A model generated the notes under the pieces. The model was not told the DNA's origin. It saw only the letters and a list, made by a program, of their open reading frames with translations, and did no database searches. The position numbers were made by a program, and so were the translations under genes. From Styela clava (Eukaryota): DNA of 64,000 nucleotides. Numbering within the stretch: the stretch's first letter is position 1; each line of letters starts with the position of its first letter. The stretch spans positions 5,518,001-5,582,000 of the forward strand of contig NC_135260.1 in NCBI RefSeq assembly GCF_964204865.1, written 5' to 3'. Positions 21,732 through 61,600 of the stretch are shown piece by piece.

Positions 21732-24700
21732 ATGAAAGAATTACCTGTGATCAATGAGGCGGTATTTTGGATTCTATTATTTTGTAAGTATTTTTAATTC
21801 AATTTTCTGTTTTCTTCATTCAAAATTTTACTCAGGGATTAAGTGAGAAGTATTGTCAACAGTGATGGTTAATTACGACTTCATCTTGAAATATTTGTAT
21901 AAAAAAACTTGGGGTTACTGGCAACACAATTTTTAACCTATAGTTTAGTACTACAAAAAAATTAATTTAGAATTCAACTGTGAATAATTTTATTTTTTAA
22001 TAGAGTCAGTAGTCCTTGGCACTATGGCAGCTGTCCATAGTTTCGCTCAGGGATTATTCTCTTTAATTTCTGAGTGAATTTTCATGATCTTGCTCAAAAA
22101 AATGATTATACATTATAAGTAAATTAAAAATAAACATTGATGATAGTTGAGTGTTATCAGGCAAACATATTTATTTACAGGTTGTGGAAGTAAATATAGT
22201 GAAGCAGCTGGAAAATGTGATTGTGAAAATACACAACTTGGAACAAAGAGCATAAATATCACATATGGACCAACTAATGAACACAACTGCAACTGTGATT
22301 GGATAGTACCAACAAGCATGGAGACAGATCAAGGAACTGCAGTTGTTCTGTTGTTACAAAATGTTTCATTTCCAATGACAACACCTAGCAGAGGACAGAG
22401 AGACTGCAGTGGAGAAATCAGATTTCCAAGTAAGTGTCAGGCTTATAAAAATCTGAATCCCGGTCATGAAAACAGAAAAAATACTATGCTAGGGGAGCCA
22501 TAAACCATAGCTTAGTTCAGGGTGGTCCAAGGTTGTCGGCCTCGCGGGTCACACTATTATTTTTGTATTGTTCGCGGGCCACAATAATGCCAAGAATAGG
22601 TAAGCAGTGCAATACAAAACAAACACTTTTATTGTTCAAACACATTGATCATTATTTGTCATTTATCAAGCAAAAAAACGCAAAAACCACCAAAAAACTA
22701 ACTGAAACATGCAAAAATCTTACTATATACTGTATATATATTCAGTGTAAAACTTCAAACTTTTCATAACGGAGAAAGTGTCATAAGGAGAAAATGCCGT
22801 TTTATATTGCCACCAACACAACTTGCAGACATATTAAACAAGCATTGTGATATTTTCGCTCCCATATCCAGTAACGCAGGTCACAGATAATGAATGAAAT
22901 GCGACGCAGGTCACAGATAATGAAGCGGAGGGCCACATGTGGCCCGCGGGCCTGGGTTTGGACCCCCCTGGCTTAGTTCAACCAACATCTTGACCTGTTT
23001 TAGAAAGTTTGCAAAGTCAGTTGTCAAAATGAGTGAACATTGAAGAAATTCTGTTTTCTATAAAATAAGACTAGACACAATATTGAAGTATTACCATTTA
23101 TTATGAGAACTCCAATATAGGATTTGATTTTCATATTTATCCAGGGAATAAGAAAAGCTGATAAAAAGGCCTAATCATGAGAGTTTCAAACCTGCGAACC
23201 CAAGCAGGATAATGCTAACGCTTAGCATGATGCGCAATACCGCCGCCGCCACTAAATCAATTCATAGCCCTAATGAGTAACTAAAACAGAATCGGTTATT
23301 GAGTGAACAGAGCATCTCTCAGATTTTGACATATACAATGTGTTCAGCAATATCAAAATATTTTATACAGGTACTTATTCACACAAATGTGAATTTCCAA
23401 GCAACTACTGTCTTGTATTTGCAACTACATCAACCATTTGCAACATCAACAAAATGAAAGAGGTAATTCCAGTTGCAAATCACACCTGTGATTCAATCAT
23501 TCCATGGAATAGAGCTGGAGGAAGCCCATACAGGATACAATACAATGCAAAAAACTTTGACGGTTACACAAAATACTTCACAATACGATATCTTGTAATA
23601 GATTGCAGATCAACAACCACACCAGAAGCGAGTGAGCCATATACACTTCAGATGGCTACTAAATTAATGTTAATTCCTTCAATTGACACAAATAAAAAAT
23701 GTTTAATAAAATAGGACTAACCGGAATTTAATAGGTGATAATATTAATAGGGTTGACCTGGCTTTGTTATGGAATTGGTAGATTTTATGGAATATGTGAG
23801 TAAACAAATTTTGAGATGTTATAACGGATATAACGGGCCTATATTTGTATTGCATTTAGAATATTAAAAATATTTCGTATAAATATTCTGTTGAATAGTT
23901 CATAAAAAACTGTAGCAGGAAAGGCACTTTAGCTTATCCAGCTTTCATATGTTGTGGTGAGGTGCAGGAGCTTTGGATACATCATGTTATCTTGGGACTG
24001 GATTGATATTGACTCCAATTTTTTTATCCACAGAAATAATTTTAATTTTTCGAGACTTTTAAAAGAAACAAACACATAATGTTTCCCAATATGTACTTAT
24101 CATAATTTCCTTTTGACACTGGAATTCAATTTGTGAGGAAGTACGGCCATTGTATGTTCTTTAAAAACATAGAATATTATTTAATAAATTAAAAGAACAA
24201 ATCCAGCATACTGCGATCTCCAAAAATATTTTAAAACGCATAATTCTTAGAGACAACAACATATATTGAGGAGACAGCTAGAGGTAATTCAACAAGAATA
24301 AATCTGTCACTATCTACAGATATATATATTGAGACAACCATGAGAGGAGATGAAATCAGCAACAAAAGCAACACCAATAGTAAGCTATAGTGAAGACTTG
24401 AAATAATTAACCTAGTCAGGGCGCATGGTTGAATTAAGACTTGAAAAAGTAGAACAAATTATCTTTAGTTTTAATGTTTTAAGAATTCTATAATGGACTG
24501 CTCATGATGTATTGTATCACACAACTCCAGGGTGGTCGTTAGAAAAACAGAATTTGTCAAACAGCTGTTTGTTTTTACAAAGATTAACTATTACAAAGTT
24601 TATATGTTATGGCATATGTTATATTACATTCATAGATGCTCAAAATGTCGCCCAGGCACTTTGGAGAAGTGTCTTAATTCAAAGTCTAGGCTCGTGTAGC

Positions 24701-25832
24701 GTTTTGAAGGTTAATTTGTGGGATATTGTTTCAATTCTACCTATACCTTCATCTGAATTCCAAATTTTGGAACTTATGAAAATTTTTTTAGCATCCACCC
24801 TGTTTTAATTTTAAAAGGAAATTCCACCAGTCAGATTTCATCAACAAGTGCTAAGAACCAAGAGCAAATTTTCACTCCAACAACAATCATCATCATTGCT
24901 GCTTCTGTATCAGGACTGCTCATTATACTCATATCCGGAATACTGATTAAAAGGTAAAGTGAGATTTTTTGATTAAACCATGATTTGAAATGAATCTCAT
25001 ATTACAGAATAAACTTTAGTATAGGGTAGTTACATTGAAAACATTATAATCAATATGTTAAGAATATGTATAATGAGTAGCATTATGAGAAAAATAACCT
25101 GATCTTTTATATGTTGCATAGTGCTTGAAGCTTGAAATGAAAATTTAAAAATGCTGTTATACTACATTCTGGAAACAAAAGGATATCACTAATATGGGGT
25201 ATATTTTTTAAGTTTTTGGAAGGCTACCAGCACTCGACTTAAGAGTTACAAAATTATTATTATGCAACATTTTCCCATCTTTGTTGCAGAAGTAATTTTA
25301 TACAGCGTTTTTGTGACTGTTGCTCTAAGCAAGGCTCTATAAAATCAGTCAATGATTTGTGAGTAAATACTATATTTTGAAAACACTGGAATCTTTCGAT
25401 TCGCCATCGGCCATCGCCTTTCTGAATTCTCACATCCTGGATGTTTGTACATTTTTTTGAAAGATTTAGCCACAGAGATTGCTTTTTTACAACAGATACT
25501 GCAGAAGTGACGACAAAAAGGTTTCCAAAACCATGGAGCAAGAAAATGGACTTGAAGAAAGATCTGAGAAAGAAATCGTTGAGAACGCCATCTACGGAAC
25601 ATCACTCAATGATCAACAAGGACCAGAAACAATCATCAATCAAATATACGACACAACTCCAGATACTAATGACGAAACAACAAAGACAGATGATCCATGT
25701 TTATATGCAGTCGTTCAGAAGAAAGAAAAAACAGAAGACAAGAATGTGGTGACTGAGGGTAACGATGACATTGTCACCATTGAAGATGAATCATCAAGCA
25801 TATATGCAGTGGTGAACAAAGATAAGAAATAA
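21732..25832 (+). CDS. Receptor copy R1: CUB-like ectodomain, S/T stalk, TM, ITIM-bearing tail, ~387 aa
   Basis: Exons 21732-21783, 22181-22429, 23371-23631, 24251-24379, 24818-24953, 25496-25832. GT-AG, 1164 nt open. Tail motifs NAIY, NQIY, CLYAVV, SIYAVV. Confidence 0.88.
22518..22970. mobile_element. hAT-type MITE in R1 intron 2
   Basis: Ends CAGGGTGGTCCAA / TTGGACCCCCCTG; perfect 8-bp TSD GCTTAGTT at 22510-22517 and 22971-22978. Confidence 0.88.
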
Positions 25833-26802: not shown

Positions 26803-29800
26803 ATGAAAGCATTACCTGTGATCAATAAGGCATTATTCTGGATTCTATTATTTTGTAAGTATTTTTTATTAAATATTTTGAATCTTTTTCCAATATTTTA
26901 CTCTGGGATCAACTGAGAAGTATCGTCAACAATGATGATGATTCATTACGACTTCTGCTTGAAATTATTGTATAAAAAAACTTGGGGTTAACGACAACAC
27001 AACTTTCATTCTATAGTTCAGTACTAGTTACAGTACTTCGATCAGGAATCATTCTTTTTAATTTCTGAAAATGTTTTTTATGATCTTGCTTTGAGCAAAT
27101 GTACCACTTCAAAAAATTATAAAAGAAAACTTTGAAATAAATATAAACACCAATCATATTAAAGTGTTTTCAGGCAAATTTATTTATTTAAAGGTTATGG
27201 CACAAATTACAGTGTTTCAGCACCATGCACTAGTTGCCCAAAAGTGATACTTGCAACAGAGAGCGAGAGTTTGGCATATTATGGACCAAATAATGAGTAC
27301 AGCTGCAACTGTGATTGGACAATACCAACAAGTATGCAGACGGATCATGATACTGCAGTTGTTCTGTTGTTACAAAATGTTACATTGCCGATGACAACTG
27401 ATACTGAAAGTACAGAAGATTGTTCCGGAAAAATCAGATTCCCAAGTAAGTGTTGAGCTGATGAAAATATGAATGCATAAATAAAAACAAAAGTATTATC
27501 GTATGGTTGGGAACTCATGAACTAGAACCATGTGCAAACAAAGTTTTGATATTTTCTGGAAGGTTGTCGAAAGTCAGACACCAAAATAATAGCTTTTACC
27601 AAGAAACAGGTGCAATCTTATAAACCTATCATGAGAGAATTACAAAAATTAATTGTTTTCGCATATACGGTAATTGAAGTTTTAATCATTTAATTTGAAG
27701 TTTCAATCATTAAGAAATCAACCCAATTTGTCCATTAAATTTAGTCGCAGAGTAAGTCAGACTTATGACTCAACTATCAATTATTGACAGAACAGAGCAT
27801 CTCTCCTGTATTCAGCATTAACTATATACTATGTTCAGGCACAACGACACACAAATGTGAATTTCCAAGCAACTACTGTCTTGCATTAGCAACTGCATCA
27901 ACCATTTGCAACATCAACAAAATCAGAGAGAAAATTCCAGTTGCAAATCACACGTGTGAATCAATCATTCCATGGAATAAAGAAGGGGAAGGCCCATACA
28001 AGATACAATATTACGCAAAAAACGTTGCTGGTTACACAAAACAATTCACACTACAATATCTTGTAATAGATTGCAGATTTTCAACAACTACACCAGAAGC
28101 AAGTTAGTCATATACATTTCAGATAACTACTAAATAAATGTTCAGTCCTTAAATCGAAAAAATAAAATGTTCATTAAAAAAAGACATAACTCAAAAGTAG
28201 ATAATATTAATACGCTTGACCTGACGTTGTTCTGGAAATGGTAGATTTTGTGAAATGGGTACTAAAACTAGTAATTGTGAGATATTGTAATGCAATGGTT
28301 CCCGAACTTCTATATCTCGTGTACCCATTCCGGAGGCTTCAGCATTCATGGCCATCATGATTATCATTCCAGTGGTATTCATAGTGTTAGTTGATTGGTA
28401 GATCTGAATCCCATTATGTTCAAACAATTCATGCTCAATAATGAGAAAGAAAACACAGTGTGAAATAACCTTATCAAGCAATGAAACTAGGAAGAACAAG
28501 AGTTTTCAAGCAAAAATAAAATCAGTTTTGCTCCTGGCATAGTGGCCCCCCTGCAACTGCTCTGTGGCCACTTTGGTGGGCCACGGGACCCCAGTCGGGA
28601 CTACTGTAATAATGGATATGATGGATATATTTGTATTCAGTTTGGAATATTAAAAATATTTCATGTAAATAAATAGATCCCAACAAAATGTAGAGGAAAA
28701 AGCACTTCACATTTAGCTTATCCCACTTTCATATGTTGTGGTGTTAGGCCTTTGAATAAATTATGCTATCTTGAGTTGAATGATATTGACTCTATATTTT
28801 AAATCCACAGAAATAATTTATAGTTGCTGGACTCTAATATTACAAAAATCATTAAGGATTCATTGTATTGACTTTTATAAGTAACAAACAAATAATGTCC
28901 CCAAAATGTACTTATAAAATATATTTTGACATTGAAATTTAATTTGTAAAGAGATAAAGTATAGCTATTGTATGTTCTTTATAGACATGAAAAATCAATA
29001 AAAAAATAAAAAAAACAAACTCGGCATGCTGTGATACCAAAAAATATTTTAAAACCTACAATTCCTAGAGACAACAACATATGATGAGGAGACAGCTAGA
29101 GGTAATTCAACATCAATGAATCTGTCACTATCTACAGATATATATAATGAGACAACCATGAGAGGAAGTGATATCAACAACAACAACAAAAGCAACACTG
29201 ATGGTAAGCTATAGTAAAGACTTAAATATGCTTTAAAAGTCAGCAATCATGATTGGCCAAATAGAATAGACTCTCTAGTTTAAATGTTTTAGCAATTCTA
29301 TAAGAAATGAATATATTAATATTTGATTTTAAAAAGAATTTCTACCAGTCAGATTTCATCAAAAAGTGATAACCCAGAGCAAATTCTTTCCTCAACAGCA
29401 ATTATCATCATCGCAGTTTCTGCATCAGGATTTCTCATTATACTCATGTCTGTGATAATGATTAAAAGGTAAAGTGAAGTTTTTTGATTGTCTCATGAAT
29501 CAAAATTTTTATAAATCTTATACCAGAATAGGTCTTGTAGCTACATTGAGAAGTATTGTAATGAATCTGTTGGGAATATACCGGTACTAATATTTGGAAA
29601 TTTACTTGGCAGTAAATGTGGATATAAAAAATAATTACTGGTACTATTAGCATGCGGGTTTGCAAAATTTAGGCCCAAAACAATATTACAGTCAAGATAG
29701 CATAATTTCCTGTATGGCGCATATGCTTGAAACTTTGAGAAGGCTACTATAAAATTAAAACTATCAGTAGAGGTTGCGCGAGACTAACTTCCAATTCTTT

Positions 29801-31663: not shown

Positions 31664-34600
31664 ATGGAAATAAAAAAATTACCTGTGCTCGATAAAGTTT
31701 TATTTTGGATATTATTATTCTGTAAGTATTTTTAACTCAATATTTCAAATTTTTTATACAAAATTTACTCTGGGATTAAGTAAGAAGTATTGTCAATAAT
31801 GATGGTTCATTACTACTGCTTGAAATTATTGTATAAAAGAACTTGTGATTACTGACAACACAACTTAAACCTATAGTTTAGTACTATAAATAATTTTAAT
31901 TAGAATTCAATTATGCAATAATCAATTTTATTTCTTAATAGAGCTCCTAGCTTTGCTCAGGGATAATTTTTTTTAATTTTCGAGTGAGTTTTTCGTGATC
32001 TTGCTTTGAGCAAATATTCTTAAAAAAATTAAACAAGAAATGTAAATTAACATCAATGATACTGAAGTGTTTTCAGGCAAACATACATGTATTCACGGGT
32101 TGTGGAACAAATGATAGTGAAGCAGTAAAATGCACTGCTTGATGCACTTTGAGCAAATATTCTTAAAAAAATTAAACAAGAAATGTAAATTAACATTAAT
32201 GATACTGAAGTGTTTTCAGGCAAACATACATGTATTCACGGGTTGTGGAACAAATGATAGTGAAGCAGTAAAATGCACTGCTCGCCTAAATGCAATACAA
32301 AATCCTGTAATAAAATAGAGAGAATGAAAATATCTTACTTATAAGGGCATGTTTGGCAATATATGCCTGTAAGAAAATTTGAGGATTTTTAAATGGTATT
32401 GTAAATGTTTTTATAGCACTCAGCTTCAATCTGAATAAAGCAGGACGATGCACTGATTGTCCAACTACAAAACTTAGAACAGAGAGCAAGAATATCACAT
32501 ATGAACTAAGTATTGGATATAACTGTCAGTGTGATTGGACAATACCAAAAAGTATGGACGCAGTTCATGAAACTGCAGTTGTTCTGTTGTTACAGAACGT
32601 TTCACTGCCAATAGAGACCACAAGTAGCAGTTCAGAAGAATGTTCTGGAGAAATCAGATTCCCCAGTAAGTTTTACTTGAGTTTGTCTTCATCAAGGTTC
32701 TTGAATACTTGGAATAGTTTCAACATTCTAGATAAAGCATCTATCGGCACAATAGAATAAAAGATAAGTAGGTGACCCTAAAGAAACCAGATTGATATCA
32801 CGTGTTATCCTAAGGAAAGACACACAAGACCAAAGCAAAGCATTGATAAAGTATCTTTCATACCACTTCTGAAGTAATTGGCACCAAAAGCATTCAATAG
32901 AAACATTAGCTTCTGCTTCGGCAAGAGTAGAATAAATAAAATTATTTGTTCTCAAAAAATAATACTCGTCAAATTGTTCAAGTTTCAACAATCACTTTGC
33001 AACTAAATCCCGTTACAACCTCGTACCCAGATAAGTTAGTGACTTAATTACCATTTACTCACTATTGTAAGGCAATTGTAAAGTTGTCAAACCCATACAT
33101 ATTTACGTATTTTAAAATATTTATATATACTCATTGCAGGCACTAGCGAATACAAATGTGAATTTCCAAGCAACTTCTGTCTTGCATTTGCAACTGCACC
33201 AAGCATTTGCAACATCAACAAAATCAGAGAAAAAATTCCAGTTGCAAATCACACCTGTGATTCAATCATTCCATGGAATAAAGCTGGAGAAAGCCCATAC
33301 AAGATACAATACAATGCAAGAAATGTTGCTGGTTACACAAAATATTTCACAGTACAATACCTTGTGATAGATTGCAGATCTCCAACAACTACACCAGCAG
33401 CAAGTGAGCCATATACACTTCAGATGGCTACTAAATTAATGTTAATTCCTTAAATTGACACAAATAAAAAATGTTTAATAAAATAGGACTAACCGGAATT
33501 TAATAGGTGATAATATTAATAGGGTTGACCTGGCTTTGTTATGGAATTGGTAGATTTTATGGAATATGTGAGTAAACAAATTTTGAGATGTTATAACGGA
33601 TATAACAGGCCTATATTTGTATTGCATTTAGAATATTAAAAATATTTCATATAAATATTCTGTTGAATAGTTCATAAAAAACTGTAGGAGTAAAGGCACT
33701 TTAGCTTATCCAGCATTCATATGTTGTGGTGAGGTGCAGGAGCTTTGGATACATCATGTTATCTTGGGACTGGATTGATATTGACTCCAATTTTTTTATC
33801 CACAGGAATAATTTTAATTTTTCAAGACTTTTAAAAGAAACAAACACATAATGTTTCCCAATATGTACTTATCATAATTTCCTTTTGACACTGGAATTCA
33901 ATTTGTGAGGAAGTACGGCTATTGTATGTTCTTTAAAAACATGGAATATTATTCAATAAATTAAAAGAACAAATCCAGCATACTGCGATCTCGAAAAATA
34001 TTTTAAAACGCATAATTCTTAGAGACAACAACATATATTGAGGAGACAGCTAGAGGTAATTCAACAAGAATAAATCTGTCACTATCTACAGATATATATA
34101 TTGAGACAACCATGAGAGGAGATTACATCAGCAACAAAAGCAACACCGATAGTAAGCTATAGTGAAGACTTAAAATAATTAACCTAGTCAGGGCGCATGG
34201 TTGAATTAAGACTTGAAAAAGTAGAACAAAGTATCTTTAGTTTTAATGTTTTAAGAATTCTTTAATGGAACGCTCATGATGTATTGTATCACACAACTCC
34301 AGGGTGGTCGTTAGAAAAACAGAATTTGTCAAACAGCTGTTTGTTTTTACAAAGATTAACTATTACAAAGTTTATATGTTATGGCATATGTTATATTACA
34401 TTAATAGATGCTCAAAATGTCGCCCAGGCACTTTGGATAAGTGTCTTAATTCAAAGTCTAGGCTCGTGTAGCGTTTTGAAGGTTTATTTGTGGGATATCG
34501 TTTCAATTCTACCTATATCTTCATCTGAATTCCAAATTTTGGAATTTATGAAATTTTTTTCAGCATCCACCCTATTTTAATTTTAAAAGGAAATTCCACC

Positions 34601-44500: not shown

Positions 44501-45092
44501 TACTATAAAATGGAATTAAAGTCCTCATCTCCAATCTGGGAAAGAAATGCTGTCACTAAGATTTTAATTAGCTATATTTTAAAGTTTTCAGAAGGTTACC
44601 AGCACTTGCCTGAAAGCAATTAAAACCACTCAAAAATAGAAGTGACAGTATTTTTATATGTGAAGTTACAAAATTATTTTTATATGGCGTTTTTCACATC
44701 TTTCACTAAACACAAGGCATCAGCCACTGATATGTGTGAGGTTAATATTATTTGGAAGAACTTGGTTCAGCGTTGCTTGTGCAATTTCGTACATCTTGGA
44801 ATGTTTGTACATTTTTTAAAATTTTGAATACTGATGTGTTTTTTAAAACAGATTCTGCCGAAGTGACAATAATAAGATTTCCAAAACCATTGAGCAAGAA
44901 AATGACAAAGTACTTGAAGAAAGATCTGAGAGAGAAATTGTTGAAAATGCCATCTATGGAAGATCACTCAATGATCAACAAGGACCAGAAACAATCATCA
45001 ATGAAATATACGACACAACTCCAGATACTAATGACGAAACAACAAAGACAGATGATCCATGTTTATATGCAGTCGTTCAGAAGAAGGAATAA
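41536..45092 (+). CDS. Receptor copy R5 with premature stop removing the distal ITIM, ~355 aa
   Basis: Exons 41536-41587, 41969-42211, 42862-43125, 43785-43919, 44110-44242, 44852-45092. TAA at 45090-45092 where paralogues have AAA. Ancestral stop at 45192-45194. Confidence 0.85.
42386..42737 (+). mobile_element. tRNA-derived SINE in R5 intron 2
   Basis: Reverse complement of the 2467-2796 family, ending ...TAAATCCTATTCTATCC. Confidence 0.82.
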
Positions 45093-49000: not shown

Positions 49001-50499
49001 ACTTCTTTCCACTTCTCTCATTTATGAAAAACTTTTTTATATACTCGTGCACAGATTGCACTCGATTGAATAAAAAATTGTGCCAAATTCAAGAGTGCGC
49101 CCCATTGAATCCACATTGAAAGATTATTACTAGTTTGTATGATGAAATTGCCCCAAACAAAGGGACTTTTTTGTTCTCTGGCAAACCATAACCATAACCT
49201 AAATCCATGAATATCTGAAGCAGCGGTCCCAAACCGGCAGCCCAGGGAGCCACAATGCTAGACGCAAAACTGATTTTACCTTTCACTTCCCATTCTTTCT
49301 AGTTTCATTGCTTAATGGGGTTTTTTCATTGTGTGTTTTAACATTTGTTTGAACATGATAGAATTTGTAATCTAATAATCAAAATAACACTCCAAATACC
49401 ACTGGAATGATAATCAGGAAGGCCATGAGTCATGAAAAGTAGGAGGTCAGAGATCGAAACTTTTCATAGATTGGGACCTATGGTAAGGTATGACCTATGA
49501 GTGGCCAAAAAACTCACTATAATATAATTACATACTTGCAATGCGCATCCTATTCAAAATTACTTTTTAAGCCATTTGTAATTCATGACAATTTTAACAC
49601 AGGGGTTTCAACCAATCCTGCAGAAGCAACAAGTGTTCGTCAAGTTCAAGTCATGAATACAACAACAATCATAATCATAGCTGCCTCAGTCTTAGGATTA
49701 GCCATTGTAGTGGTATCTGCTCTAATACTGAGAAGGTAAAGTGATAGAACTTATATATATTTATAATAAGGTGGATTGAAATCAAACTTAAAATGATACA
49801 AATGATAGCACTGAAAAAATTTCAATTTTCGTATGGTTTGAAATATAAAAAAATTATAAAATTTCATTTGAGTGGAAATAAGATTTTTGCACACAAACAG
49901 GGGACAATTTCACTTGAGTCACTTTAGTAGGAACACTAAGATTTTACAACTTCAAAAATTTAGGCCCTTTGCCTTAAACAGGAAAAGTTTAAATAAACTG
50001 ACTATTCATTAGCAGATGAAATATGTTGAACAAATGCAAATTCTCAATCAAATATTACAATGTGACAAACCATTGAAATTATATTCAAATATTTGATGGC
50101 TATATTTTCCCTCAAGAAATGTATTTAAATATACCATTCAATTTGTATCATCTCAGACGCTGCCGAAGGGACAATAATGATATTTCTAGCACTAACGAGG
50201 AAGGAGGTCAGGATAAAGCTGATGGTAGCTCTGAGAGAGAAATTGTTGACAACGCCATCTATGGAACATCACTTAATAATCAACAAGGATCAGAAACAAT
50301 CATCAACGAAATATACGACCCAACTCTGGATGCGGATGGCGAAAAAACAAATACAGATGAGATATGTTTATATGCAGTCGTTCAAAAGAAAGAAAAAACA
50401 GAAGACAAGAATGTGGTGACTGAGGGTAACGATGACATTGCCACCGTTGAAGATGAACCATCCAGCATATATGCAGTGGTGAACAAAGATAAGAAATAA
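46050..50499 (+). CDS. Receptor copy R6, ITIM-bearing, ~382 aa
   Basis: Exons 46050-46092 (MKSEIGILWWIFIM), 46541-46789, 48062-48325, 48739-48855, 49603-49735, 50157-50499. GT-AG, 1149 nt open. Confidence 0.87.
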
Positions 50500-51643: not shown

Positions 51644-54600
51644 ATGAAATTAAAAACATGTTCTATGGATAAAAATGGAATCCTGTGGTGGATTTCAATT
51701 ATATGTAAGTATTTTTTCAACTTCTAAAATATCTGAATATTTTTTGTGTGAGTTTTTTTTTTAGAATCCTTCATATCAAGTTTTTACAAGGCTCGATTGC
51801 ATAGCAATTTTGGTTCTGTTAACATCATTTGAGAAAAATGAAGAAGAAAAAAATGATTACTAGAAACACCATAGTTGAAAAATTTATTTAACTTAAGCAA
51901 TAACAATTGCAACGATTACCCTATTTAGTGAAAAAAAAAAATACCCAATTTATATGCATATTTAACGATGATAAAATACATAACAAGATTGAAAATTGTG
52001 CATTGAATGATTTCATCCATATGATAATGCAATTTTAACAGCACTCAGCATCAGCCTGAATGAAGCAGGACGATGCACTGATTGTACAAATACAATACTC
52101 GGAACAAAGAGCGAAAATATCACATTTTATGGACCAACTAATGACTTCAACTGTGAATGTGAATGGACAATACCAACAAGTATGAAGACAGATCATAAAA
52201 CTGCAATTGTTTTGATGTTACAAAATGTTTCATTGCCATTGACAACGAGTAGCAGTACAGACTGCTCTGCAAGTATCAGATTCCCAGGTATTACACTATC
52301 AACAGTTTTTACTCAATCTTCTACTATGAATAAAAAAAACTTTATAACACTTGAATCAGGGGCGGCCACTTTTCATAATTGGGGGGGGGGTTAATCCAGA
52401 ACCTAGGCCTCTTTGCTTGGACATGGAACTCATGTGTCACAAAACCGATCCCTTGAATTCCGCAAGAATTGGACCACCACCCTGCTAACAGACAGAAACA
52501 ATAAATTTGAGTCATATTTGAGTATTGTTTCAACTTTTAGTTTTGCATAAAGCGCACCACCACCAAAATTTTACCAAGGAAATATCATTTAACCAGTAGA
52601 ATTGCCATCATTGCCAATTTATTTAATCATAATAAAGCAACATGCAGGATTCTCGCAATGACAACTTTACAGGGTTTTTATTTATTATTTAATACGAAAA
52701 TATTCGGTGTCAGAAATAATATTGTTAATTTAAAATTGGGACCTTTAATTTATCAACGGTGACGATGAAGAACACAGACGGCCCCAAACGATAAAAATCG
52801 GAATAAAACCCTCAAGCTGTCTGTCTTTAACATATGTTGCCGATATGATTGCCTAGTTCTCCCGGGAATATAAAAACAAACCTTGCGTGAGAATTGAACC
52901 TTGTGAAAAAAAGACGAGCAGAAATGTAGCTCACGAACATTAAAATGTCTAGCGTTCGGGATGCCTGTTGTATATATATTAAAAATACCTGATATTCCAA
53001 AATTCGTTAAAAATATTAGAATTATTCGATTCTATAAAATTATTTCATTTTGACCACCCTTGCAATCTGTAATCACGCAACCTGGAGAAACACGTGGTAG
53101 TCCAAACACTGATGCAATGAAACTTAGTAAAACCTTCATTAAATTTAGTAATTTGCACTACTCCACGAAAGCGTGGTGGAACTGACAATTATTTCCTATC
53201 TCGAACACAAAACGGTTATCTTTTTAGGATAGTCTCAGGGGTTTGAAAAGTCGAATAAGTGTTTTAACATAGTAAATTGTATGATCTTTGCCATAAAATT
53301 ATGCTCGAGCCTTGCACGAAATTCATAATGTGAAAAGATATGATCAGCGGTGAAAATTGTTTATAACAACTTTAAACCTATTTAGGGCAAAACCGAAGCA
53401 CAATAATGTGAGGTGGTCCGAATGTGATATCGAGTACGTTATTCTAAGAATACAGTTATATTATTGCTAACTATTAACTATTTGTTCGCGCTCGACTGTC
53501 GCATTTTTCGGAAATGATAATTTTAATTTTGTAAGGCGGAAACAACATGTGTTTAAATATAGACGAACTTTTTATTTTGAATAAAAAACAGCATGCGAAA
53601 CATGGAAGATGTAAAAGCAAACAAAAACATCTTCTACAAATTTCCCATTTCCATGACTTTAATAATTATTTGTCAAAAAATTTCGCAGCAATAAAAACAA
53701 AAATATATTTTAAAACATTTTTGCAAAACTATGAGATTACTATTAACATATACCAGTACTCAAAACAAGAATATGCCAATTTCTGGTACTGCTGATTTTA
53801 CCTGTAATCACAACAAAATATTAAAGAGATCATCTTTTGTAGGCGCTGATGGGGCAGAATGTGAATTTCCAATAAACTACTGTCTTACATTTGCAACTGC
53901 ATCAACTATATGCAACATCAACAAAATCAGAGAAAAAATTTCAGTTGCAAATCACACCTGTGATTCAATCATGCCATGGAATAAAGCTGGAGGAAGCCCA
54001 TACAAGATACAATACTTTGCAGGAAACTATGCTGATCACACAAAATACTTCACAATACAATATCTTGTAATCGATTGTAGACCTCAAACAACTACACCAG
54101 AAGAAGGTGAGAAAAAGCAATTAAAGATTATATTAAAAAATTAAATGTTCTGAATGAAAATATATTTTTGTTAACCAATACTATTCGTACATCTGCCACA
54201 ATCAGTGGTAATGTTTAAAATTATATCCAAGTAATGATCACTATCCCAATCAAAACATATTTGTGGAATTGACAAAAAAGTATGGTACATATTTGGGGGG
54301 AGATAATCAATAAAATTGCCTCAATCAATAAAAGATCATGACCAATAATATTTTAATATAAGCATATTTTCTTTTAAATACCTTTGGTTTCCTAAAACTT
54401 CAAATAAGACATACCAGTATGAATATTCTGTACAAATATTTCCATATTTTGGTTCAACCTCTAAAATATTACAAAACGAAACTTCTTAGAGACGACAGCA
54501 TATACAGAAATCATATCTGACAATAACACAACAATGATAAAACAATCAATATCTACAGAGATAACCGGAAGTACAACCCAGATTGTCTCCAAGAATCCTG

Positions 54601-55640: not shown

Positions 55641-58600
55641 ATGAGAAAGAAAAAAGATTTCCTAAATAAATATCAAATTATTCTCGGGATACTGATATTA
55701 TGTGAGTATTTTATTATCTGGGCATATTCTGGATATGTTTGTATATTTATGTTTCTATATTTAATTTGATGAATGACTGAAACCCAATATTTCATTTTAA
55801 ATTTTTATAGCAATCAGCCTTAGTCTGAATGGAGCCCAAATATGCACCAAATGTCCCAGTGTAATACTTGGAACAGAGAATGAGAATATAACATACGGAC
55901 CAAGTAATGAACTCAACTGCCAATGTGATTGGACAATACCAACAAGTATGGACACAGATCATGAAACTGCAGTTGTTCTGCTGTTGCAAAATGTTTCACT
56001 GCCAATGACAACGGATGGAATTACAGACTGCTCTGGAGAAATCAGATTTCCAAGTGAGCCGATTTGGTCCAATTCATAAATACTGTTTAAGCTACCAGCA
56101 GTGATCGGTAGAATTGTAAAAATCTAAACTATTTGTTTTCAAACTGGAGTCCGCGGTCGCTTAGGGGTCCGCGAAGCGATTTTAGAGGGACCACAAGACA
56201 ACTTGAACCGTGGCACAAAAGCACTTTAATCTGAAGTAGGCTACATCAACTATTGATTTCATTCTTGGTGAACATATTTGAATCAGTGAATTTTGTTAAT
56301 TTGGCCCTGCAAGGAAACGATATCACCGTACTCCAATGTCATGAAAAATTAACTGCCTTCAAAATGAAGCTAACATAATGGCGATCTGAGTTAGAAATCA
56401 GTAACTTTGGCCAATTTCCAGATCGAAATTCATTTATCGATTAAAATGAACTTGACATAAGAGAAGAAAGTTATCGTTGCTTACCTACCGTACCTTACCA
56501 GATTTTGAAAAATATTATCGATTCTTCAATAACCTGTTTGGAATCACTGTTAGCGATCTACCTTCGGAAGACAGTTTAATTCAAGAACAGTTTATCGATC
56601 TTGTGAGCAGGGATGGCCATTTCCGAATACTAAACTATTCCGAATACATTCTTAAATAATGTTTTCGAATCTGGAATTCCGAATACATTCTAAAATCGAA
56701 AATAACACATTTTTGTTTTAGTTTATTAAAAACCAGTAAATTAGGAAATAAGCTTTAATAGAAATATCAGAATAAAGCCACAAACCAACAATATATGTAC
56801 ACAAAGTAATTGATAGTTTATAGCTATCAATAAAAAATAATAGCAGCTTGTGACACAGTCAGTTTATTAAAATTACTTACTTTGTACAAATGACCATATG
56901 AAAAGATAGCCATTGAGGAGTTGTTTGACGCTTTCTATCATTGGTACCATGATATTACGATAATAGTCAAGTCTATTGACAAAAATACTACTTGTATTCA
57001 GATAATTGTGTATATTTTCTGAAAGTAATAAAATTTATTGGCAATACAGGCAACTGAAACAAGCAACAACAATCGAAAATCCATTATTCCTTTAAAAAAT
57101 TCTAATATTAAAGCCTAGAGTATTCTACTACCTACCAGTATATTTTTATATTAATTTATTAGAACCATATTGTAATTATGTGTAACATATTGTTGTGTTT
57201 GAAATTAGAAATGAATTAGTAGAGGATAGATGACCACCACTGCCAGCCGCGCAGCCAGGATTTTCGAAATCGGAAATTCCCATTGCCGCCTGTAACAACC
57301 ACCACGATTACGCGCTCGTTAAAAGAGTCGTCTTTTCAGCGTATAATGATCATCCTGTTACGTAAAATATTCAATCCATGACAACTACGAGATTTTAAAA
57401 TATCTTTACATATTAATTTAATGCGTCCAACGTAACTCGCGGTTGCTTCTTCTTACGTCAAAAAAACATTACTATTCGGTCCACGGCGATCTGTGACCTA
57501 AAAGTATGAGATAAACTGCCTGATGTATTTAATTTTAATACGTATTTTTGCAATCTTGCCAATTCGTTATCGCCGTTAGAATAATCTCAAATAATGATAT
57601 AAAATCCTGTTAAGTGTAGAGTATAATTCATTTCATACAAGGAATATACATATAAAGTTTAGCAGTAAATAAAAAATACATATTCATCGCCGCGATTATG
57701 CCACCTGTTAGAAGCGTCGACTTTTACAACAAATAATATAACAACGAATATATATTTTTCTGTTGTGCAAAGTGATGAATTCGTGACCAATTGTCTTCAA
57801 TTTAACCTGCGGTTGCGTCGACAAAATAAAATCCTCACCACTCTTATATACCATTGCAATTCGTGGTCATAAAAATAAAAACGTGTGGTAAACCAGCCGA
57901 TTAAATAATGTTTTGATCCGTATTTTGCGAATTCGGCAAATAATTAGATGTACTTGTTAGAAAAAACTGTTCAAAAAATCCATGAATCTGCTGTAACATC
58001 TCAGAGTAAAATTTATTTCATAACAATAAAATTGATTGAATATACTTTAGATTAATTATATTATATACATCCTCACAACCCGGGCGTTTCGAACCATGTA
58101 TCATGTTAACACGAAAATATTCGACGGCAATTTAAAGTAATGGATAACCAGGCAAATCCCGCTCTCAATTTGTGACGATAGGTTTCTAAACGTCGACCAA
58201 ACCAAATTTTGCGATTTTCACTGCCTAGAAAAGTGTTATTTAAACTTTCGTGGGCCTCAATAAAACTTATATTGTTTACGGTTTTATTTTTAGTATTTTA
58301 AATTGCCACTTCTCAATCAAAAAGTTGCGTTGTCTTTAGAAACTCACCGCCGATGAACGTATTTTACCAGATTCACAATTCCGTGCGCGTACAAAAATAA
58401 AATAATTGTCATCATTATCGTGTAACAAATTTGTGGGAAATTTTCGTTTTAGAGAAATTAACACAAACGTAAAGGCGTTTACGGCCTAAATAACACGTTA
58501 CGCTGATGAGTGATGAAAACAATCACGCGCAAGTTTTTATCAAGAATGTTTTCATTCAACGGAAACGTCTTGAAAGCGACTTCGAAAATGTGTGACGTCA

Positions 58601-61600
58601 CACAAATATCGATATTCTTATGAAAGCTAATTCTGATATTCGAATAACGAGATATTCGAATACATTTGAATACTTTATTCGAATTGACCATCCCTGCTTG
58701 TGAGTGATGGTGGTACAAAACCAAATTTACAAGACATGCCCGCAGTGAATTTGGATTGAAATGGCCTATCCCGATGTCGCTAAGATGGCACTAAAACTTG
58801 CGAATGGGAGGCAGCTTTTTCTACGTTACTTGCTATTAAAACAAAATGCCGAAACAGTATGGCTGTGAGACACGATATGAGAGTTGCATTATCCAAAACA
58901 GAACCTGAGGTAGTAAAACTAGTGGAAGCCAAGAAGGCGCACCCATCTCATTGAATAGTGGAAAGAGGGTCATCAGAAAAATTGTAAGGGGACTGTTATG
59001 CGTAATTTTTCAAAAAGTTTGAGAACCACTGGTCTAATCCTTATAATAGTCAAGTTTGGGCTTGTTAGAAATTTTGAAGATTCCCAGAAGGTGATTTATT
59101 CCCAGAATGTTGGTGTTAAATGATAAAAAATGGTCTTTTGTTAGAACTAATTTTTGCTATATTTAGGTTGAAATCTAGCGAATGAGATTTGCAAATTGAA
59201 AGAGAGTAAACAGTATCTTGCGAAAATACAGAATATTCATTACATAGAGGTCATAAATTTTTTTAGAGGAAACTGTGACCAAACAAAATGATTAAACTTA
59301 GGTAACGAGTAATGCTTTGTGAGTCTAGTGTAAACGCGTACCAATCATCTTCTTTTCTTATCCAATTAATAAAAATAATCATAAATCCCATTCAGGTTGA
59401 ATGGTCAATACCTGGGCAAGCATTTATCCTATGAAATCCACACAAATTTCAACAAAAAATCATTTTTCTCAGAAAATATTTCACTCATCAATACTTTGGT
59501 TTTTGTTCAGGCACTAATCAGGCAAAATGTGAGTTTCCAACCAACTACTGTCTTGTATTTGCAACTGGATCAACCATTTGCAACATCAACAAAACCAGAG
59601 AGAAAATTCCAGTTGCAAATCACACCTGTGATTCAATCATTCCATGGAATAGAGTTGGAGGAAGCCCATACAAGATAGAATACTATGCAGGAAACCATGC
59701 TGGTTACTCAAAATACTTCACAATACAATATCTTGTGATAGATTGCAGACCAGCAACAACCAAAATACCACTCAGTAAGTGTCATAAACCAATCTTATGT
59801 TACTTTTTTCAGTCCTTAACACTCCTTTAAAACAACCAAGAGAATATTCAATCAATTGATGCTAAGGCTAAGGGCATAGCTGACAAAGTGACATGAGCAA
59901 AAGGTTAATTTATCAATTTAAGGGTTGTGATAACGTTGACAAAGACAATACACATGGGTTCAAGTAACACGCTTGGTACTTGCATAGTATGTATACCAGG
60001 GTAGGGTTAGGCCATAATTGTAATCCGATTTTCCTTATTTTAGTTTTATTCCAAGTTCAGGGACTGTCTGTGTTAGCCAAGCGATTATACCTGCCCATAG
60101 GTTTGAGTCACTTTACACAACTTGATGTAAAGTGTGCAAACAAAATTAGTTACCTCCATATTGGCACCATACTTTTGGGGCGCCACATGCTCAGTGGAAC
60201 AGCTGAGATCAGAAGAAATTTTGAAAAGGTACAGTAAAAATTATACATTGATTTGTGTGATTTTGTGCTCAACCATACAGCAGCTTTCATTGAAGATAAA
60301 ATATTAAAACAATTAATACTGTTTTATTTCAAGGCACCACTGAAGCAGCAGGATTTTCAACAACGCCTATATCAACTATAGGAGAAAAATTACACAATTC
60401 AAGTACCGGTAAGTAAAAAATTCAAATCAATCCATTCATACACTATGCTACAAGCAAAGCTTAACAGCTCAAATATCTTGAACTTTTAAATACCGTAATT
60501 TACGGACAATAAGGCTCACTTTGAATCTTTTTTCTCTGAAAATCGATCATGCGCCTCTTAAGCCGGTACGCTGAATGTATCACGTAATGCTTTATGGCCT
60601 ATTTACAAAACCAGTATCTATACTATTGTTTTATAAACAAACTGTCGTTTTATGTTTTTTTTAGATAAAATTCAATACCCATTAAAATATTTTTGTTTAA
60701 TGAATATTGTATGGTTAACCCGATACTCCTTAAAAACCGTCTTATGGTCCGCTGTGCCTATGTATGGACAGAACCTCAATCTAAGCAATTTATTGACAGT
60801 GCGTAAATACGGTGTATATTATTTATATAACATATAATATTTATATAATAATCTTTATCACCCAATAAATATAAAATGAATATCACACTACAACATTGAC
60901 CAATGTCTTAAACAATTTGACAGGCAATGCTGAATTAGAAGCAACTACAGAGCAGACAGAATCTTTCAATCATCCCACAACAATCCAATCCAGCACTCCC
61001 AACACAGAATTGATGAGCAATACAAAACTTATCATCATAATTGCAGCCTCAGGTTTAGGATCACTTATCATTGTGACTGTTATCTTGCTGATAGGAAGGT
61101 AGGGATATATTTCTTGACATAAATTTAATTAAATTTATGAATTCAATTTTTTCCTGATCTTGGTTCAAGTATGAAAAATAATGATATATTTAAAGAAAAA
61201 AAAGATTGAATTGGGATGCTGGGGTGTCACTGTACGTTCTGCCTCTTTTTTTATATGATATATTTATATGCCTTTTGTGCTAAACACGTCCTACGTCCTT
61301 GTTTCAGCACGTAGGCTAATGGAAAAATACTACAGCACACTACAGCAATTAATTAATTAAAGAAAAAATGAGTTATTATTATTATAATTTATATAATATA
61401 TACGAGTTTTCAAACATTACCATATCACTCACTACAGATATCACTGCCCAAAAAAGAGTTCAACGACCATTGGAGACAGCAATGACAACACTGCAGATGC
61501 TGGCACTGAAAGGGAAATTGTTGATAATCCACTCTACGGCACAACTCCGAATGGCCATCAATCAGAAATAATCATCAATGGGATTTATGACACAACTACA

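What the first reader, a model, noticed from the sequence alone, without database searches (positions are those of the whole stretch)
22181..59774. Hypervariable loops on a fixed 10-cysteine CUB-like scaffold
Seen: the framework is nearly invariant (CxCxWxxP, AVVLLLQN, CSGEIRFP, NYCL, ICNI, IPVANHTCDSIIPWN, PYKIQY, KYFTIQYLVIDC). Two patches differ in almost every copy, the first with indels. After LQNVSLP: MTTPSRGQRD, MTTDTESTED, IETTSSSSEE, MSTASGSRD, MHSHGSPE, IDTKTSSSAE, LTTSSSTD, MTTDGITD. After YxIQY: NAKNFDGY, YAKNVAGY, NARNVAGY, NAKNSAGD, YSRGYVGY, YAKNSAGY, FAGNYADH, YAGNHAGY. Known: CUB domains have Y..N..C.W.I near the start and G-F...Y at the end, and their ligand/Ca2+ face is formed by the loop near the third Cys and the loop before the last strand. 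Inference: the variable patches map to those loops, suggesting diversifying selection on a ligand-binding face. The canonical acidic Ca2+ residues are not conserved, and extra Cys suggest an inserted disulfide-bonded segment.
Basis: partly seen in the sequence, partly recalled or inferred. Interest (0 to 1): 0.78.

Follow-up and report, generated by a model that had tools for sequence, protein, structure and literature searches.

The report
Sea squirt CUB-fold receptor gene family
This sea squirt carries a large cluster of uncharacterised cell-surface receptor genes whose outer part is predicted to fold like a known binding module (CUB), varies most in a few loops, and is joined to different kinds of inner signalling tail, much as in immune receptor families.

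Summary
All sixteen variable strings, the ten cysteines and the coordinates are exact in eight tandem genes (R1-R8, plus a divergent R0) of Styela clava. The family has at least 41 copies in this genome. Database relatives were found in this species alone, all named 'uncharacterized'.

The CUB reading is supported at fold level only. An AlphaFold model of NCBI's own R6 protein matched CUB domains in the top 22 and top 45 rows of two structural comparisons (best Z 9.3, 108 of 117 residues). Pfam and profile comparison found nothing.

Diversifying selection is weakly supported. dN/dS is about 0.6-0.7 in patch 1 and 1.3 (not significant) in patch 2. One patch-2 residue passes correction (q 0.02). 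Patch 1 also has raised synonymous divergence, indels and a recombination breakpoint. Four segments are variable, not two.

Whether the patches share a face could not be measured, because no coordinates were available.

The same ectodomain carries two tail types: an ITIM with paired YxxV motifs, or YxN plus repeated YxxP. I read this as a germline-diversified paired-receptor family. The scan noted a different paired-receptor system elsewhere in this genome (s1-809841).

The parts
10529..10771 (+). R0 (divergent copy) exon A; patch 1 = 10723-10746 (YTNANIQG)
11292..11567 (+). R0 exon B (3' end approximate, donor chosen by phase); patch 2 = 11465-11488 (RSNNLFGY)
22181..22429 (+). R1 exon A (phase 1-1); patch 1 = 22375-22404 (MTTPSRGQRD)
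   Evidence: NCBI model P0047
23371..23631 (+). R1 exon B (phase 1-1); patch 2 = 23544-23567 (NAKNFDGY)
27194..27445 (+). R2 exon A; patch 1 = 27391-27420 (MTTDTESTED)
   Evidence: P0038
27839..28102 (+). R2 exon B; patch 2 = 28012-28035 (YAKNVAGY)
32417..32665 (+). R3 exon A; patch 1 = 32611-32640 (IETTSSSSEE)
   Evidence: P0032
33140..33403 (+). R3 exon B; patch 2 = 33313-33336 (NARNVAGY)
36991..37236 (+). R4 exon A; patch 1 = 37185-37211 (MSTASGSRD)
   Evidence: P0045
38020..38283 (+). R4 exon B; patch 2 = 38193-38216 (NAKNSAGD)
41969..42211 (+). R5 exon A; patch 1 = 42163-42186 (MHSHGSPE). The 5' part is 95-100% identical to R1, and the likeness ends at the patch.
42862..43125 (+). R5 exon B; patch 2 = 43035-43058 (YSRGYVGY). 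Nearest exon B belongs to a class II gene about 170 kb away.
   Evidence: P0033
46541..46789 (+). R6 exon A; patch 1 = 46735-46764 (IDTKTSSSAE)
   Evidence: joint 46789->48062 in RNA-like runs X5 and X6; NCBI model P0001
48062..48325 (+). R6 exon B; patch 2 = 48235-48258 (YAKNSAGY)
52042..52287 (+). R7 exon A; patch 1 = 52239-52262 (LTTSSSTD)
53843..54106 (+). R7 exon B; patch 2 = 54016-54039 (FAGNYADH)
55811..56053 (+). R8 exon A; patch 1 = 56005-56028 (MTTDGITD)
59511..59774 (+). R8 exon B; patch 2 = 59684-59707 (YAGNHAGY)
49587..49733 (+). R6 transmembrane exon
   Evidence: joint 49733->50155 in run X6; model helix 244-273
50155..50499 (+). R6 cytoplasmic tail exon with LYAVV and the ITIM-type SIYAVV, 33 residues apart
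25482..25832 (+). R1 tail exon (LYAVV at 25701, SIYAVV at 25800)
40227..40565 (+). R4 tail exon
44850..45092 (+). R5 tail exon, cut short by an in-frame stop at 45090-45092, before the last ITIM
   Evidence: P0033 ends there
61436..61765 (+). R8 tail exon (VYAVI and SLYAVV, 29 residues apart)

Best explanation
These are tandem genes of a multigene family of type I membrane receptors, found so far only in Styela clava.

Architecture. Each protein has a signal peptide, one ectodomain of about 150 residues, a Thr-rich stalk, one membrane helix and a tyrosine-motif tail. The ectodomain is predicted to fold as a CUB-type beta sandwich, with ten cysteines and an insert of about 40 residues. It is split over two phase-1 exons.

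Where the copies differ. They differ most in four short segments. By position these correspond to the two loops that form the Ca2+ and ligand site in canonical CUB domains: the loop after the fourth strand and the loop before the last strand.

Proposed diversity mechanism (inferred).
- Tandem duplication.
- Recombination or gene conversion that re-pairs exon A with exon B.
- Indels in the Ser/Thr-rich patch 1.
- Positive selection on a few apex residues set between conserved loop residues.

Proposed signalling (inferred from motifs alone). The window's genes (class I) end in paired YxxV motifs, the last of which is an ITIM, and would recruit SH2 phosphatases and inhibit. Most other family members (class II) carry YxN, repeated YxxP and YxxI/V motifs, and would recruit adaptors or kinases and activate. 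The family would then work as paired receptors that read a variable ligand. The ligand and the tissue are unknown.
For: Family size and range.
- A profile of exon B matched 41 places in the window's genome: about 35 on the same contig at 5.53-5.79 Mb, 3 at 6.16-6.19 Mb, 2 weak ones at 19.05 Mb and 1 on another contig.
- Of 19 hits among 1.84 billion representative proteins, 10 are family members. All 10 are Styela clava 'uncharacterized protein' entries.
- Five of the nine weaker hits were scanned and are unrelated repeat proteins. The other four were not scanned.
- A second search found 34 proteins, all from S. clava.

Gene model.
- The splice phases and sites I inferred agree with NCBI's models.
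- The joints 46789->48062 and 49733->50155 appear in RNA-like runs.

Fold. See: every one of the top 22 and top 45 rows is a CUB domain.

Ectodomain-focused divergence among R1-R5.
- Mean pairwise DNA identity is 0.56-0.69 in exon A, 0.77-0.88 in the intron upstream of it, and 0.92-0.96 in the tail exon.
- The exon A framework has dN/dS 0.84.

Selection.
- Core omega is 0.35-0.47. Patch 1 is 0.71 and patch 2 is 1.33.
- The patch 2 apex site has p 0.002 and q 0.023. Patch 1 has sites with beta>alpha (columns 70, 74, 80) next to TT and GS positions under purifying selection.
- A mixture model with an omega>1 class fits better (LRT 29.8 and 66.2).

Mosaicism.
- R1 and R5 are 95-100% alike over the 5' part of exon A. 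They then diverge at patch 1, and the next intron is unalignable.
- R5's exon B groups with a class II gene (support 96/95). Exon A rejects that grouping (AU p 0.003).

Tails.
- Of 40 family proteins scanned, 6 carry SIYAVV or SLYAVV, and 9 have paired YxxV motifs 33 residues apart.
- Most of the others carry YEN plus one to six YEVP motifs.

Possible allelic divergence. For 3 of 6 loci present in both NCBI annotation series, the two models differ at 16-29% of ectodomain residues but only 6-8% of the rest.
Against: - No function, ligand, tissue or phosphorylation was tested.
- The fold rests on one model built from a shallow alignment of paralogues from one species. Z about 9 is only modestly above the best Z of 7-8 that the tool reports as typical for models without a clear match. 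A second model could not be made.
- There is no sequence-level link to CUB.
- An extended hhalign run, not significant, gave a different register for the C-terminal half.
- At patch level, omega is not above 1.
- Patch 1 has pS 0.59-0.65. Its divergence is therefore not specifically amino-acid changing, and it may reflect misaligned indels or older ancestry.
- My site tests used fixed trees with weak deep support and no control for recombination. The mixture test also ignores synonymous rate variation, and several sites it flags have high synonymous rates.
- Two further variable segments may lie away from the proposed face.
- Class II membrane helices have no charged residue.
- A word-based search with the class I tail found only the window's own six genes.
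- The clade tested was chosen after I had seen the tree.
- The 'allelic' pairs may be mis-paired paralogues.
Confidence: 0.6

Rival explanations
1. Unconstrained loops. The patches are surface loops under little constraint in a rapidly duplicating family. Their variety comes from drift, indel slippage in Ser/Thr codons and patchy gene conversion, not from selection by a ligand.
For: - Patch omega is near 1: 0.62-0.71 for patch 1 and 1.25-1.33 (not significant) for patch 2.
- Sister pairs show no excess of amino-acid changes.
- Synonymous divergence is raised in patch 1, with pS 0.59-0.65.
- The patches differ in length by multiples of three bases.
- A recombination breakpoint lies at patch 1.
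- pLDDT dips at patch 1.
Against: - Inside the patches, conserved and variable positions alternate. TT, GS and the D/E before the Cys in patch 1, and A, N, G and Y in patch 2, are under purifying selection or nearly fixed. Neighbouring positions change often with few synonymous changes.
- One site survives correction at q 0.023.
- The whole of exon A has diverged more than its flanking intron, while the tail exon is kept.
Confidence: 0.3
2. Not a CUB. The ectodomain is some other cysteine-rich beta sandwich, and the CUB matches reflect a common jelly-roll arrangement or a model biased by a shallow alignment.
For: - No Pfam, PDB-sequence or hhalign signal.
- No Foldseek match at E <= 0.001.
- The tool notes that a best Z of 7-8 is common for unmatched models.
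- SID1, GOLD and collagen-binding sandwiches follow at Z 5-6.8.
Against: - Every one of the top 22 rows and top 45 rows is a CUB domain, from many different proteins.
- Up to 108 of 117 target residues are aligned at 2.9 A.
- Non-CUB folds begin about 2.4 Z units lower.
- The Y..N..C.W.I stretch aligns in register.
Confidence: 0.1
3. A recognition family outside immunity. The same molecules serve gamete self-sterility, larval settlement or cell adhesion rather than immune-type or allorecognition signalling.
For: - No tissue data were obtained. The RNA-like runs are coded and unlabelled.
- CUB domains occur in ascidian and sea urchin gamete proteins (passages of PMC9265791).
- Fast-evolving, species-restricted families are typical of reproductive proteins (from general knowledge).
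Against: An ITIM and paired YxxV tails on one set of genes, with YxN/YxxP tails on the other, are the hallmark of paired regulatory receptors. The CUB proteins named in that review are secreted proteases or a very large egg receptor, not single-domain membrane receptors.
Confidence: 0.15

Closest known systems
Canonical CUB domains (Pfam PF00431), e.g. C1r/C1s/MASP CUB2, TSG-6 CUB_C, neuropilin a-domains, spermadhesins
   Same: The predicted fold superposes over almost a whole CUB domain: Z 9.2-9.3, rmsd 2.9 A, 108-110 residues. There is a Y..N..C.W.I-like stretch in register. The two patches sit where the Ca2+ and ligand loops of CUBs lie. That surface is used by several CUB domains to bind protein ligands (passages of PMC12684940).
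   Different: No sequence-level match, although the same genome has at least 70 ordinary CUB matches elsewhere. Ten cysteines instead of four. About 40 extra residues with a helix. The Glu at the end of the fourth strand is absent. The other acidic ligands could not be placed.
Botryllus schlosseri fester co-receptors (FcoR), the allorecognition receptor family of a related ascidian
   Same: Both are large clusters of type I receptors with tails that carry ITIMs or other tyrosine motifs. Both diversify by intergenic recombination. FcoR 'core-2' motifs ([A/D]VYxxV) occur only in pairs, 29-33 residues apart, at the C-terminal end (PMC12582321, abstract, outline and section 13 read). The class I tails here end in paired [LVI]Y[AS]V[VI] motifs 33 residues apart in 9 proteins and 29 apart in 1.
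   Different: The FcoR ectodomain is Ig plus sushi, not CUB-like. No sequence homology of the tails was shown: a word-based search with the tail found only the window's genes, and I held no Botryllus sequence. No canonical hemITAM is present here. DESGYEVP has Pro where hemITAM has Leu.
Vertebrate paired receptor clusters (KIR, LILR, Ly49, CD300, PILR)
   Same: Tandem clusters of closely related ectodomains are joined to inhibitory (ITIM) or activating tails, with exchange between the two kinds. This comparison is from general knowledge and from listings and abstracts seen.
   Different: The scaffold is neither Ig nor C-type lectin. The putative activating members have no charged membrane residue for an ITAM adaptor and carry their own tyrosine motifs.
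DCBLD1/DCBLD2 (discoidin, CUB and LCCL domain receptors)
   Same: Both are type I receptors with a CUB domain outside and repeated YxxP motifs inside. In DCBLD these bind CRKL after phosphorylation by Fyn and Abl (title and start of abstract of PMC6029619). Class II tails here have one to six YEVP motifs.
   Different: No LCCL or discoidin domain. No sequence similarity was tested or found. DCBLD is a pair of genes, not a large variable family.

Membership tests
CUB domain (Pfam PF00431) | Match to the Pfam CUB profile above its gathering score | tested here: not met
   No CUB hit at E <= 10 for six exon translations or six full-length family proteins. hhalign against eight CUB domains of the same genome gave probability 0.2%.
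CUB domain (Pfam PF00431) | Beta-sandwich fold superposable on solved CUB domains | tested here: met
   Predicted model only. C1r CUB2: Z 9.3, rmsd 2.9, 108 of 117 residues. C1s CUB2: Z 9.2. The top 22 and top 45 rows are all CUB.
CUB domain (Pfam PF00431) | Four conserved cysteines forming two disulfides | tested here: inconclusive
   Ten conserved Cys. One lies in the C.W position. Pairing could not be read without coordinates.
Ca2+-binding CUB subset | Acidic Glu/Asp/Asp ligands and a Tyr in the loop after strand 4 and the loop before the last strand | tested here: inconclusive
   No reliable residue-level alignment. There is no Glu after LQNVSLP. A D/E before the fifth Cys and an Asn in patch 2 are mostly conserved.
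ITIM-bearing inhibitory receptors | S/I/V/L-x-Y-x-x-I/V/L in the cytoplasmic tail | tested here: met
   SIYAVV is present in the NCBI models of R1, R2, R3, R4 and R6, and SLYAVV in R8. R5 loses it to a stop.
ITIM-bearing inhibitory receptors | Tyrosine phosphorylation and recruitment of SH2 phosphatases | not testable with these tools
   Needs biochemistry.
Paired activating/inhibitory receptors | Closely related ectodomains joined to opposite tail types within one cluster | tested here: met
   Ectodomains are 66-80% identical to R6 across both tail classes. The two tail classes are shown. That the tails signal in opposite directions is inferred.
Paired activating/inhibitory receptors | Activating member has a charged membrane residue and pairs with an ITAM adaptor | tested here: not met
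   The class II membrane helices listed contain no charged residue.
Botryllus FcoR family | Ig and sushi ectodomain | tested here: not met
   No Ig or sushi Pfam hit. The fold is CUB-like.
Botryllus FcoR family | Paired C-terminal YxxV motifs 29-33 residues apart | tested here: met
   Spacing is 33 in 9 proteins and 29 in 1, of 12 class I proteins examined. Two have a single motif. The definition comes from PMC12582321 section 13.
DCBLD receptors | CUB plus LCCL plus discoidin domains | tested here: not met
   No such Pfam hits.

The most novel reading that the evidence does not exclude
Styela clava uses a CUB-fold domain, rather than an Ig, lectin or LRR domain, as the variable scaffold of a germline-encoded self/non-self or immune receptor repertoire. 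Inhibitory and activating versions would exchange ectodomain exons. The inhibitory tail would be the same paired-YxxV module seen in the Botryllus FcoR allorecognition co-receptors. Ectodomain alleles would differ by 16-29% between individuals.
Probability: 0.25. Interest if true: 0.8.

Novelty: new variant of a known kind. Interest (0 to 1): 0.62.

Why it matters
Variable receptor families for self/non-self recognition have arisen repeatedly in animals, nearly always on Ig, C-type lectin or LRR scaffolds. A family of 40 or more genes on a CUB-type fold in a chordate would add a new scaffold to that list, if it is indeed a recognition repertoire. Three features point that way: inhibitory-type and activating-type tails, an ectodomain that has diverged more than its own introns, and a tail layout like that of the Botryllus allorecognition co-receptors.

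It would also give a tractable case in a solitary ascidian for asking how such systems are built, for example by exon re-pairing across a fast-changing intron. If instead the loops are merely unconstrained, this is an ordinary lineage-specific expansion of an uncharacterised membrane protein.

Tried and rejected
Searches and tests that led nowhere or had to be replaced:
- Pfam on single exons and on full proteins gave nothing. A PDB sequence search with the family profile gave only membrane-helix noise.
- hhalign against eight CUB domains of the same genome was not significant. A forced longer alignment gave a different, unreliable register for the C-terminal half. I did not use it.
- The lower hits of the big profile search matched only a 20-35 residue stretch. 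I scanned five of those nine (P0013, P0014, P0017, P0018, P0019). They are bacterial Ig-like, Kre9, BACON and similar repeat proteins, and I dropped them as unrelated. I did not scan P0008, P0012, P0015 or P0016.
I replaced it with a 16 x 16 grid of synonymous and non-synonymous rates.
- I hoped the laid reads would show allelic variation. The DNA-like run X1 matched the window with no other letters over single-copy stretches, and the raw Hi-C run was thin. The differences listed lie where paralogue contigs pile up. The reads therefore say nothing about polymorphism.
- A search with the class I tail found only the window's own six genes, so a shared tail module with other receptors is not shown.
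- Literature searches for a described CUB plus ITIM receptor family in tunicates found none. The S. clava genome paper's passages on expanded families do not mention it.
- The 'CUB' hits in the Botryllus review were DOI strings, not the domain.
- I considered and rejected a link to ascidian gamete CUB proteins.

Every full-length analysis used NCBI protein models as the tools returned them. Exon A and exon B were aligned, tree-built and tested separately.

Full report
WHAT IS THERE

The window is eukaryotic DNA of about 33% G+C with no N. Earlier notes of this scan call the genome a sea squirt. Database look-ups name it Styela clava.

On the + strand there are nine copies of one gene type: R0 at about 10.5-14 kb and R1-R8 from 21.7 to 61.8 kb. 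Each has:
- a short signal-peptide exon;
- exon A of 243-252 bases;
- exon B of 261-264 bases (about 276 in R0);
- one or more stalk exons;
- a membrane exon;
- a tail exon.

Exons A and B both begin and end in phase 1, with AG and GT at their borders.

Full-length analyses used NCBI's own protein models, which the database tools returned:
- P0047, P0038, P0032, P0045, P0033 and P0001 are R1 to R6.
- P0025 is a model that runs R7 into R8.

Those models use exactly the exon borders I had inferred. Contigs of two RNA-like runs carry the joints 46789->48062 (exon A to exon B of R6, GT..AG). Run X6 also carries 49733->50155. That these runs are RNA is the tool's guess.

THE OBSERVATION

The finding's limits are the first base of R1 exon A and the last base of R8 exon B. 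All sixteen patch strings are exact. Ten cysteines are conserved, five per exon. R1, R4 and R5 have a sixth at the signal-peptide end.

The framework motifs are close to constant, not invariant. Among R1-R8 the exact strings occur in 3 to 8 of 8 copies, and the rest differ by one or two residues. Exon A is 56-71% identical to R6 and exon B 75-79%.

I collected 30 exon A and 33 exon B copies from the whole genome. I held about half of the cluster as 10-kb blocks, plus 3.2 kb around each of 30 exon B matches.

In that set the patches stand out, but they are two of four peaks:
- Patch 1: mean pairwise difference 0.40-0.47.
- Patch 2: 0.39-0.44.
- The stretch around the first Cys pair (exon A alignment columns 10-18): 0.42-0.49.
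- The first ten residues of exon B: 0.33-0.49.
- The core: 0.07-0.17.

Outside the window, patch 1 mostly reads x-TT-G-S/T-GS-x-D/E. The window's copies are therefore the most varied ones.

THE FAMILY

A profile of exon B matched 41 places in this genome:
- about 35 in one + strand cluster at 5.53-5.79 Mb of the window's contig;
- 3 on the - strand at 6.16-6.19 Mb;
- 2 weak ones at 19.05 Mb;
- 1 on another contig.

Against 1.84 billion representative proteins the same profile found 19 hits. Ten are family members. All ten are S. clava 'uncharacterized protein' entries. Five of the other nine were scanned and are unrelated repeat proteins. Four were not scanned.

A word-based search with the R6 ectodomain found 34 proteins, all S. 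clava. Absence from other tunicates is limited by which proteomes those collections hold.

THE FOLD

P0001 was modelled with an alignment of 31 paralogues. The ectodomain came out confident: ten-residue pLDDT blocks of 72-92 over residues 21-180, with dips to 64 at patch 1 and 59 at residues 141-150. The stalk and tail were disordered.
- Foldseek found no match at E <= 0.001, but its best rows are CUB domains (C1r CUB2, E 0.011, probability 0.95).
- An aligner run against 48,161 representative chains put CUB domains in all of the top 22 rows, Z 9.2 to 6.8. C1s CUB2 gave Z 9.2, rmsd 2.9 A and 109 residues, over model residues 26-175. SID1-type and GOLD sandwiches followed at Z 6.8 and below.
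- A second look at Foldseek's best 1000 chains (988 could be aligned) put CUB domains in all of the top 45 rows. The best was C1r CUB2: Z 9.3, 108 of 117 residues.

The tool warns that a best Z of 7-8 is common for unmatched models. The weight therefore lies in the uniformity of the list and the near-complete coverage of the target domain.

By sequence there is no link:
- Pfam found nothing.
- A PDB profile search found nothing.
- hhalign against eight ordinary CUB domains of the same genome gave probability 0.2%.

The one stretch hhalign aligned puts YGPSNEYNCNCDWTIP...AVVLLLQNVSL on the CUB stretch Y..N..C.W.I plus the following strand.

In the model, patch 1 is the loop between strands 67-77 and 92-95. 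Patch 2 is the loop between strand 151-157 and the last strand, 165-175. In canonical CUBs the corresponding loops carry the Ca2+ ligands and form a protein-binding surface. The loop equivalence rests on my knowledge of CUB structures. Passages of PMC12684940 say that this surface is used by several CUB domains to bind ligands.

I had no coordinates. The claim that the two patches share a face is therefore inferred, and so is the position of the other two variable segments. About 40 residues (roughly 96-139, with four Cys and a helix) fall outside the CUB core.

SELECTION

Pairwise counts among R1-R8:

| Region | pS | pN | omega |
|---|---|---|---|
| Patch 1 | 0.585 | 0.455 | 0.62 |
| Exon A framework | 0.279 | 0.211 | 0.71 |
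| Patch 2 | 0.232 | 0.278 | 1.25 |
| Exon B framework | 0.203 | 0.126 | 0.58 |

Codon models on the 30 and 33 copies:
- Overall omega is 0.52 for exon A and 0.54 for exon B.
- By partition, patch 1 is 0.71, patch 2 is 1.33 (p 0.12 against 1), and the cores are 0.35 and 0.47 (p below 1e-13).

Site by site:
- The apex of patch 2 (the residue after N in YAKN-x-AGY) has no synonymous and many amino-acid changes: p 0.002, q 0.023.
- Next come an exon B site near its start (q 0.085) and the residue two before the fifth Cys in patch 1 (q 0.10).
- Inside patch 1, TT and GS are under purifying selection. Inside patch 2, A is under purifying selection and N, G and Y are nearly fixed.

A mixture model with a class of omega above 1 fits better than one without: LRT 29.8 for exon A and 66.2 for exon B, with about 11% of sites at omega 2-2.8. 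That model ignores synonymous rate variation and recombination, and several sites it flags have high synonymous rates.

Five independent sister pairs per exon show no significant excess of amino-acid changes in either patch (Fisher p 0.40 and 0.42).

Taken together, the patches evolve at about the neutral rate on average. A few positions are probably under positive selection, set between conserved ones.

MOSAIC STRUCTURE

Mean pairwise DNA identity among R1-R5:
- intron upstream of exon A: 0.77-0.88;
- exon A: 0.56-0.69;
- intron between exons A and B: about 0.36, that is, unalignable;
- exon B: 0.77-0.92, with a dip at patch 2;
- tail exon: 0.92-0.96.

So exon A has diverged more than the intron beside it, while the tail is kept. 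Within R1-R5 the exon A framework has dS 0.27 and dN 0.23, omega 0.84.

R1 and R5 are 95-100% identical over the 5' three-fifths of exon A. They then fall to 50-65% from patch 1 onward, and have unrelated introns after it.

Exon B of R5 groups with the exon B of a class II gene about 170 kb away, which shares its YSRGYVGY loop (support 96/95). Exon A data reject that pairing (log-likelihood 58 lower, AU p 0.003). Exon B data do not reject R1+R5 (p 0.37). I named that clade after seeing the tree.

Paralogue contigs and reads laid on R6 fit the framework and run off as loose ends at 46733-46736, the start of patch 1. One runs off in front of 48252, within patch 2.

I read this as exon-level recombination or conversion across a fast-changing intron, which re-pairs the loops of exon A with the loop of exon B. 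It also explains part of the high synonymous divergence at patch 1.

TAILS

Of 40 family proteins scanned (some are older versions of the same locus), two tail types stand out.

Class I is the window's type.
- It ends in two [LVI]Y[AS]V[VI] motifs, 33 residues apart in 9 proteins and 29 apart in the R8 tail. The last tyrosine is 5-8 residues from the end.
- In R1-R4 and R6 the last motif is SIYAVV and in R8 it is SLYAVV. Both fit the ITIM consensus.
- R5 loses it to a stop at 45090-45092.

Class II is the type of most other members. It carries YEN, one to six YEVP, and YE[IV][IV] or YEEI.

Four proteins have no membrane helix or no tyrosine tail.

The Botryllus FcoR paper describes 'core-2' motifs ([A/D]VYxxV) found only in pairs, 29-33 residues apart, at the C-terminal end (PMC12582321, section 13). 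The layout here is the same. Homology is not shown: a tail search found only R1-R6.

Repeated YxxP in a CUB-bearing receptor recalls DCBLD1/2 (PMC6029619, title and start of abstract).

A POSSIBLE SIGN OF ALLELIC DIVERSITY

Six loci have protein models in both NCBI accession series. I take these to come from different assemblies; I did not check this.
- In three loci, the two models differ at 44 of 150, 26 of 161 and 39 of 150 ectodomain residues, but at only 13 of 175, 9 of 145 and 13 of 155 residues after it.
- One of the three is the singleton on another contig.
- Two loci are nearly identical.
- One differs throughout.

Mis-paired paralogues could give the same picture.

VERDICT

The CUB-like fold is supported by a predicted structure but not by sequence. 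The loop mapping is plausible. Diversifying selection is shown for at most a few residues, and much of the patch variety comes with indels, recombination and near-neutral change.

The larger finding is the family itself: an uncharacterised cluster of 40 or more genes, found so far only in S. clava, encoding CUB-fold receptors with inhibitory-type and activating-type tails. I found no paper that describes it (searches; passages of the genome paper; its supplements were closed).

Noticed in passing
window 51644-61765: NCBI's model P0025 (624 aa, LOC120347104) runs from R7's signal exon through R7's membrane exon straight into part of R8's exon A and on to R8's tail. That gives two ectodomains and two membrane helices. 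R7 has no tail exon of its own. The model may be a read-through transcript or an annotation artefact.
   Followed up: partly
window 45090-45092: R5's tail exon has an in-frame stop after ...LYAVVQKKE, which removes the terminal SIYAVV motif. NCBI's model P0033 ends there.
   Followed up: partly
window 22430-23370 and the same intron in R2-R5: The intron between exons A and B is unalignable among R1-R5 (identity about 0.36), and its length ranges from 393 to 941 bases. The rest of the repeat unit is 75-95% alike.
   Followed up: partly
window 10529-14200 (R0): The divergent upstream copy shares the ten cysteines but is only 47% identical in exon B. It differs throughout both patches. I did not examine its membrane and tail exons.
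   Followed up: no
window 2583-2895 and 12052-12333: Open frames on both strands share a peptide stretch (…IRGAVASVF…) at two distant places, so this is probably a dispersed repeat element.
   Followed up: no
G000 contig 3 at 15.71-15.81 Mb and contig 19 at 9.35-9.39 Mb: These are dense tandem arrays of ordinary single-exon CUB domains: about ten on contig 3, and long multi-CUB open frames of 619-898 aa on contig 19. They are separate from the family studied here.
   Followed up: no
G000 C14:5668266-5668334 and 5750766-5750834; 5762742-5762981: Two short exon A fragments match profile positions 2-24 only, and one exon A is split by a frame break. These are probably broken copies within the cluster.
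   Followed up: no
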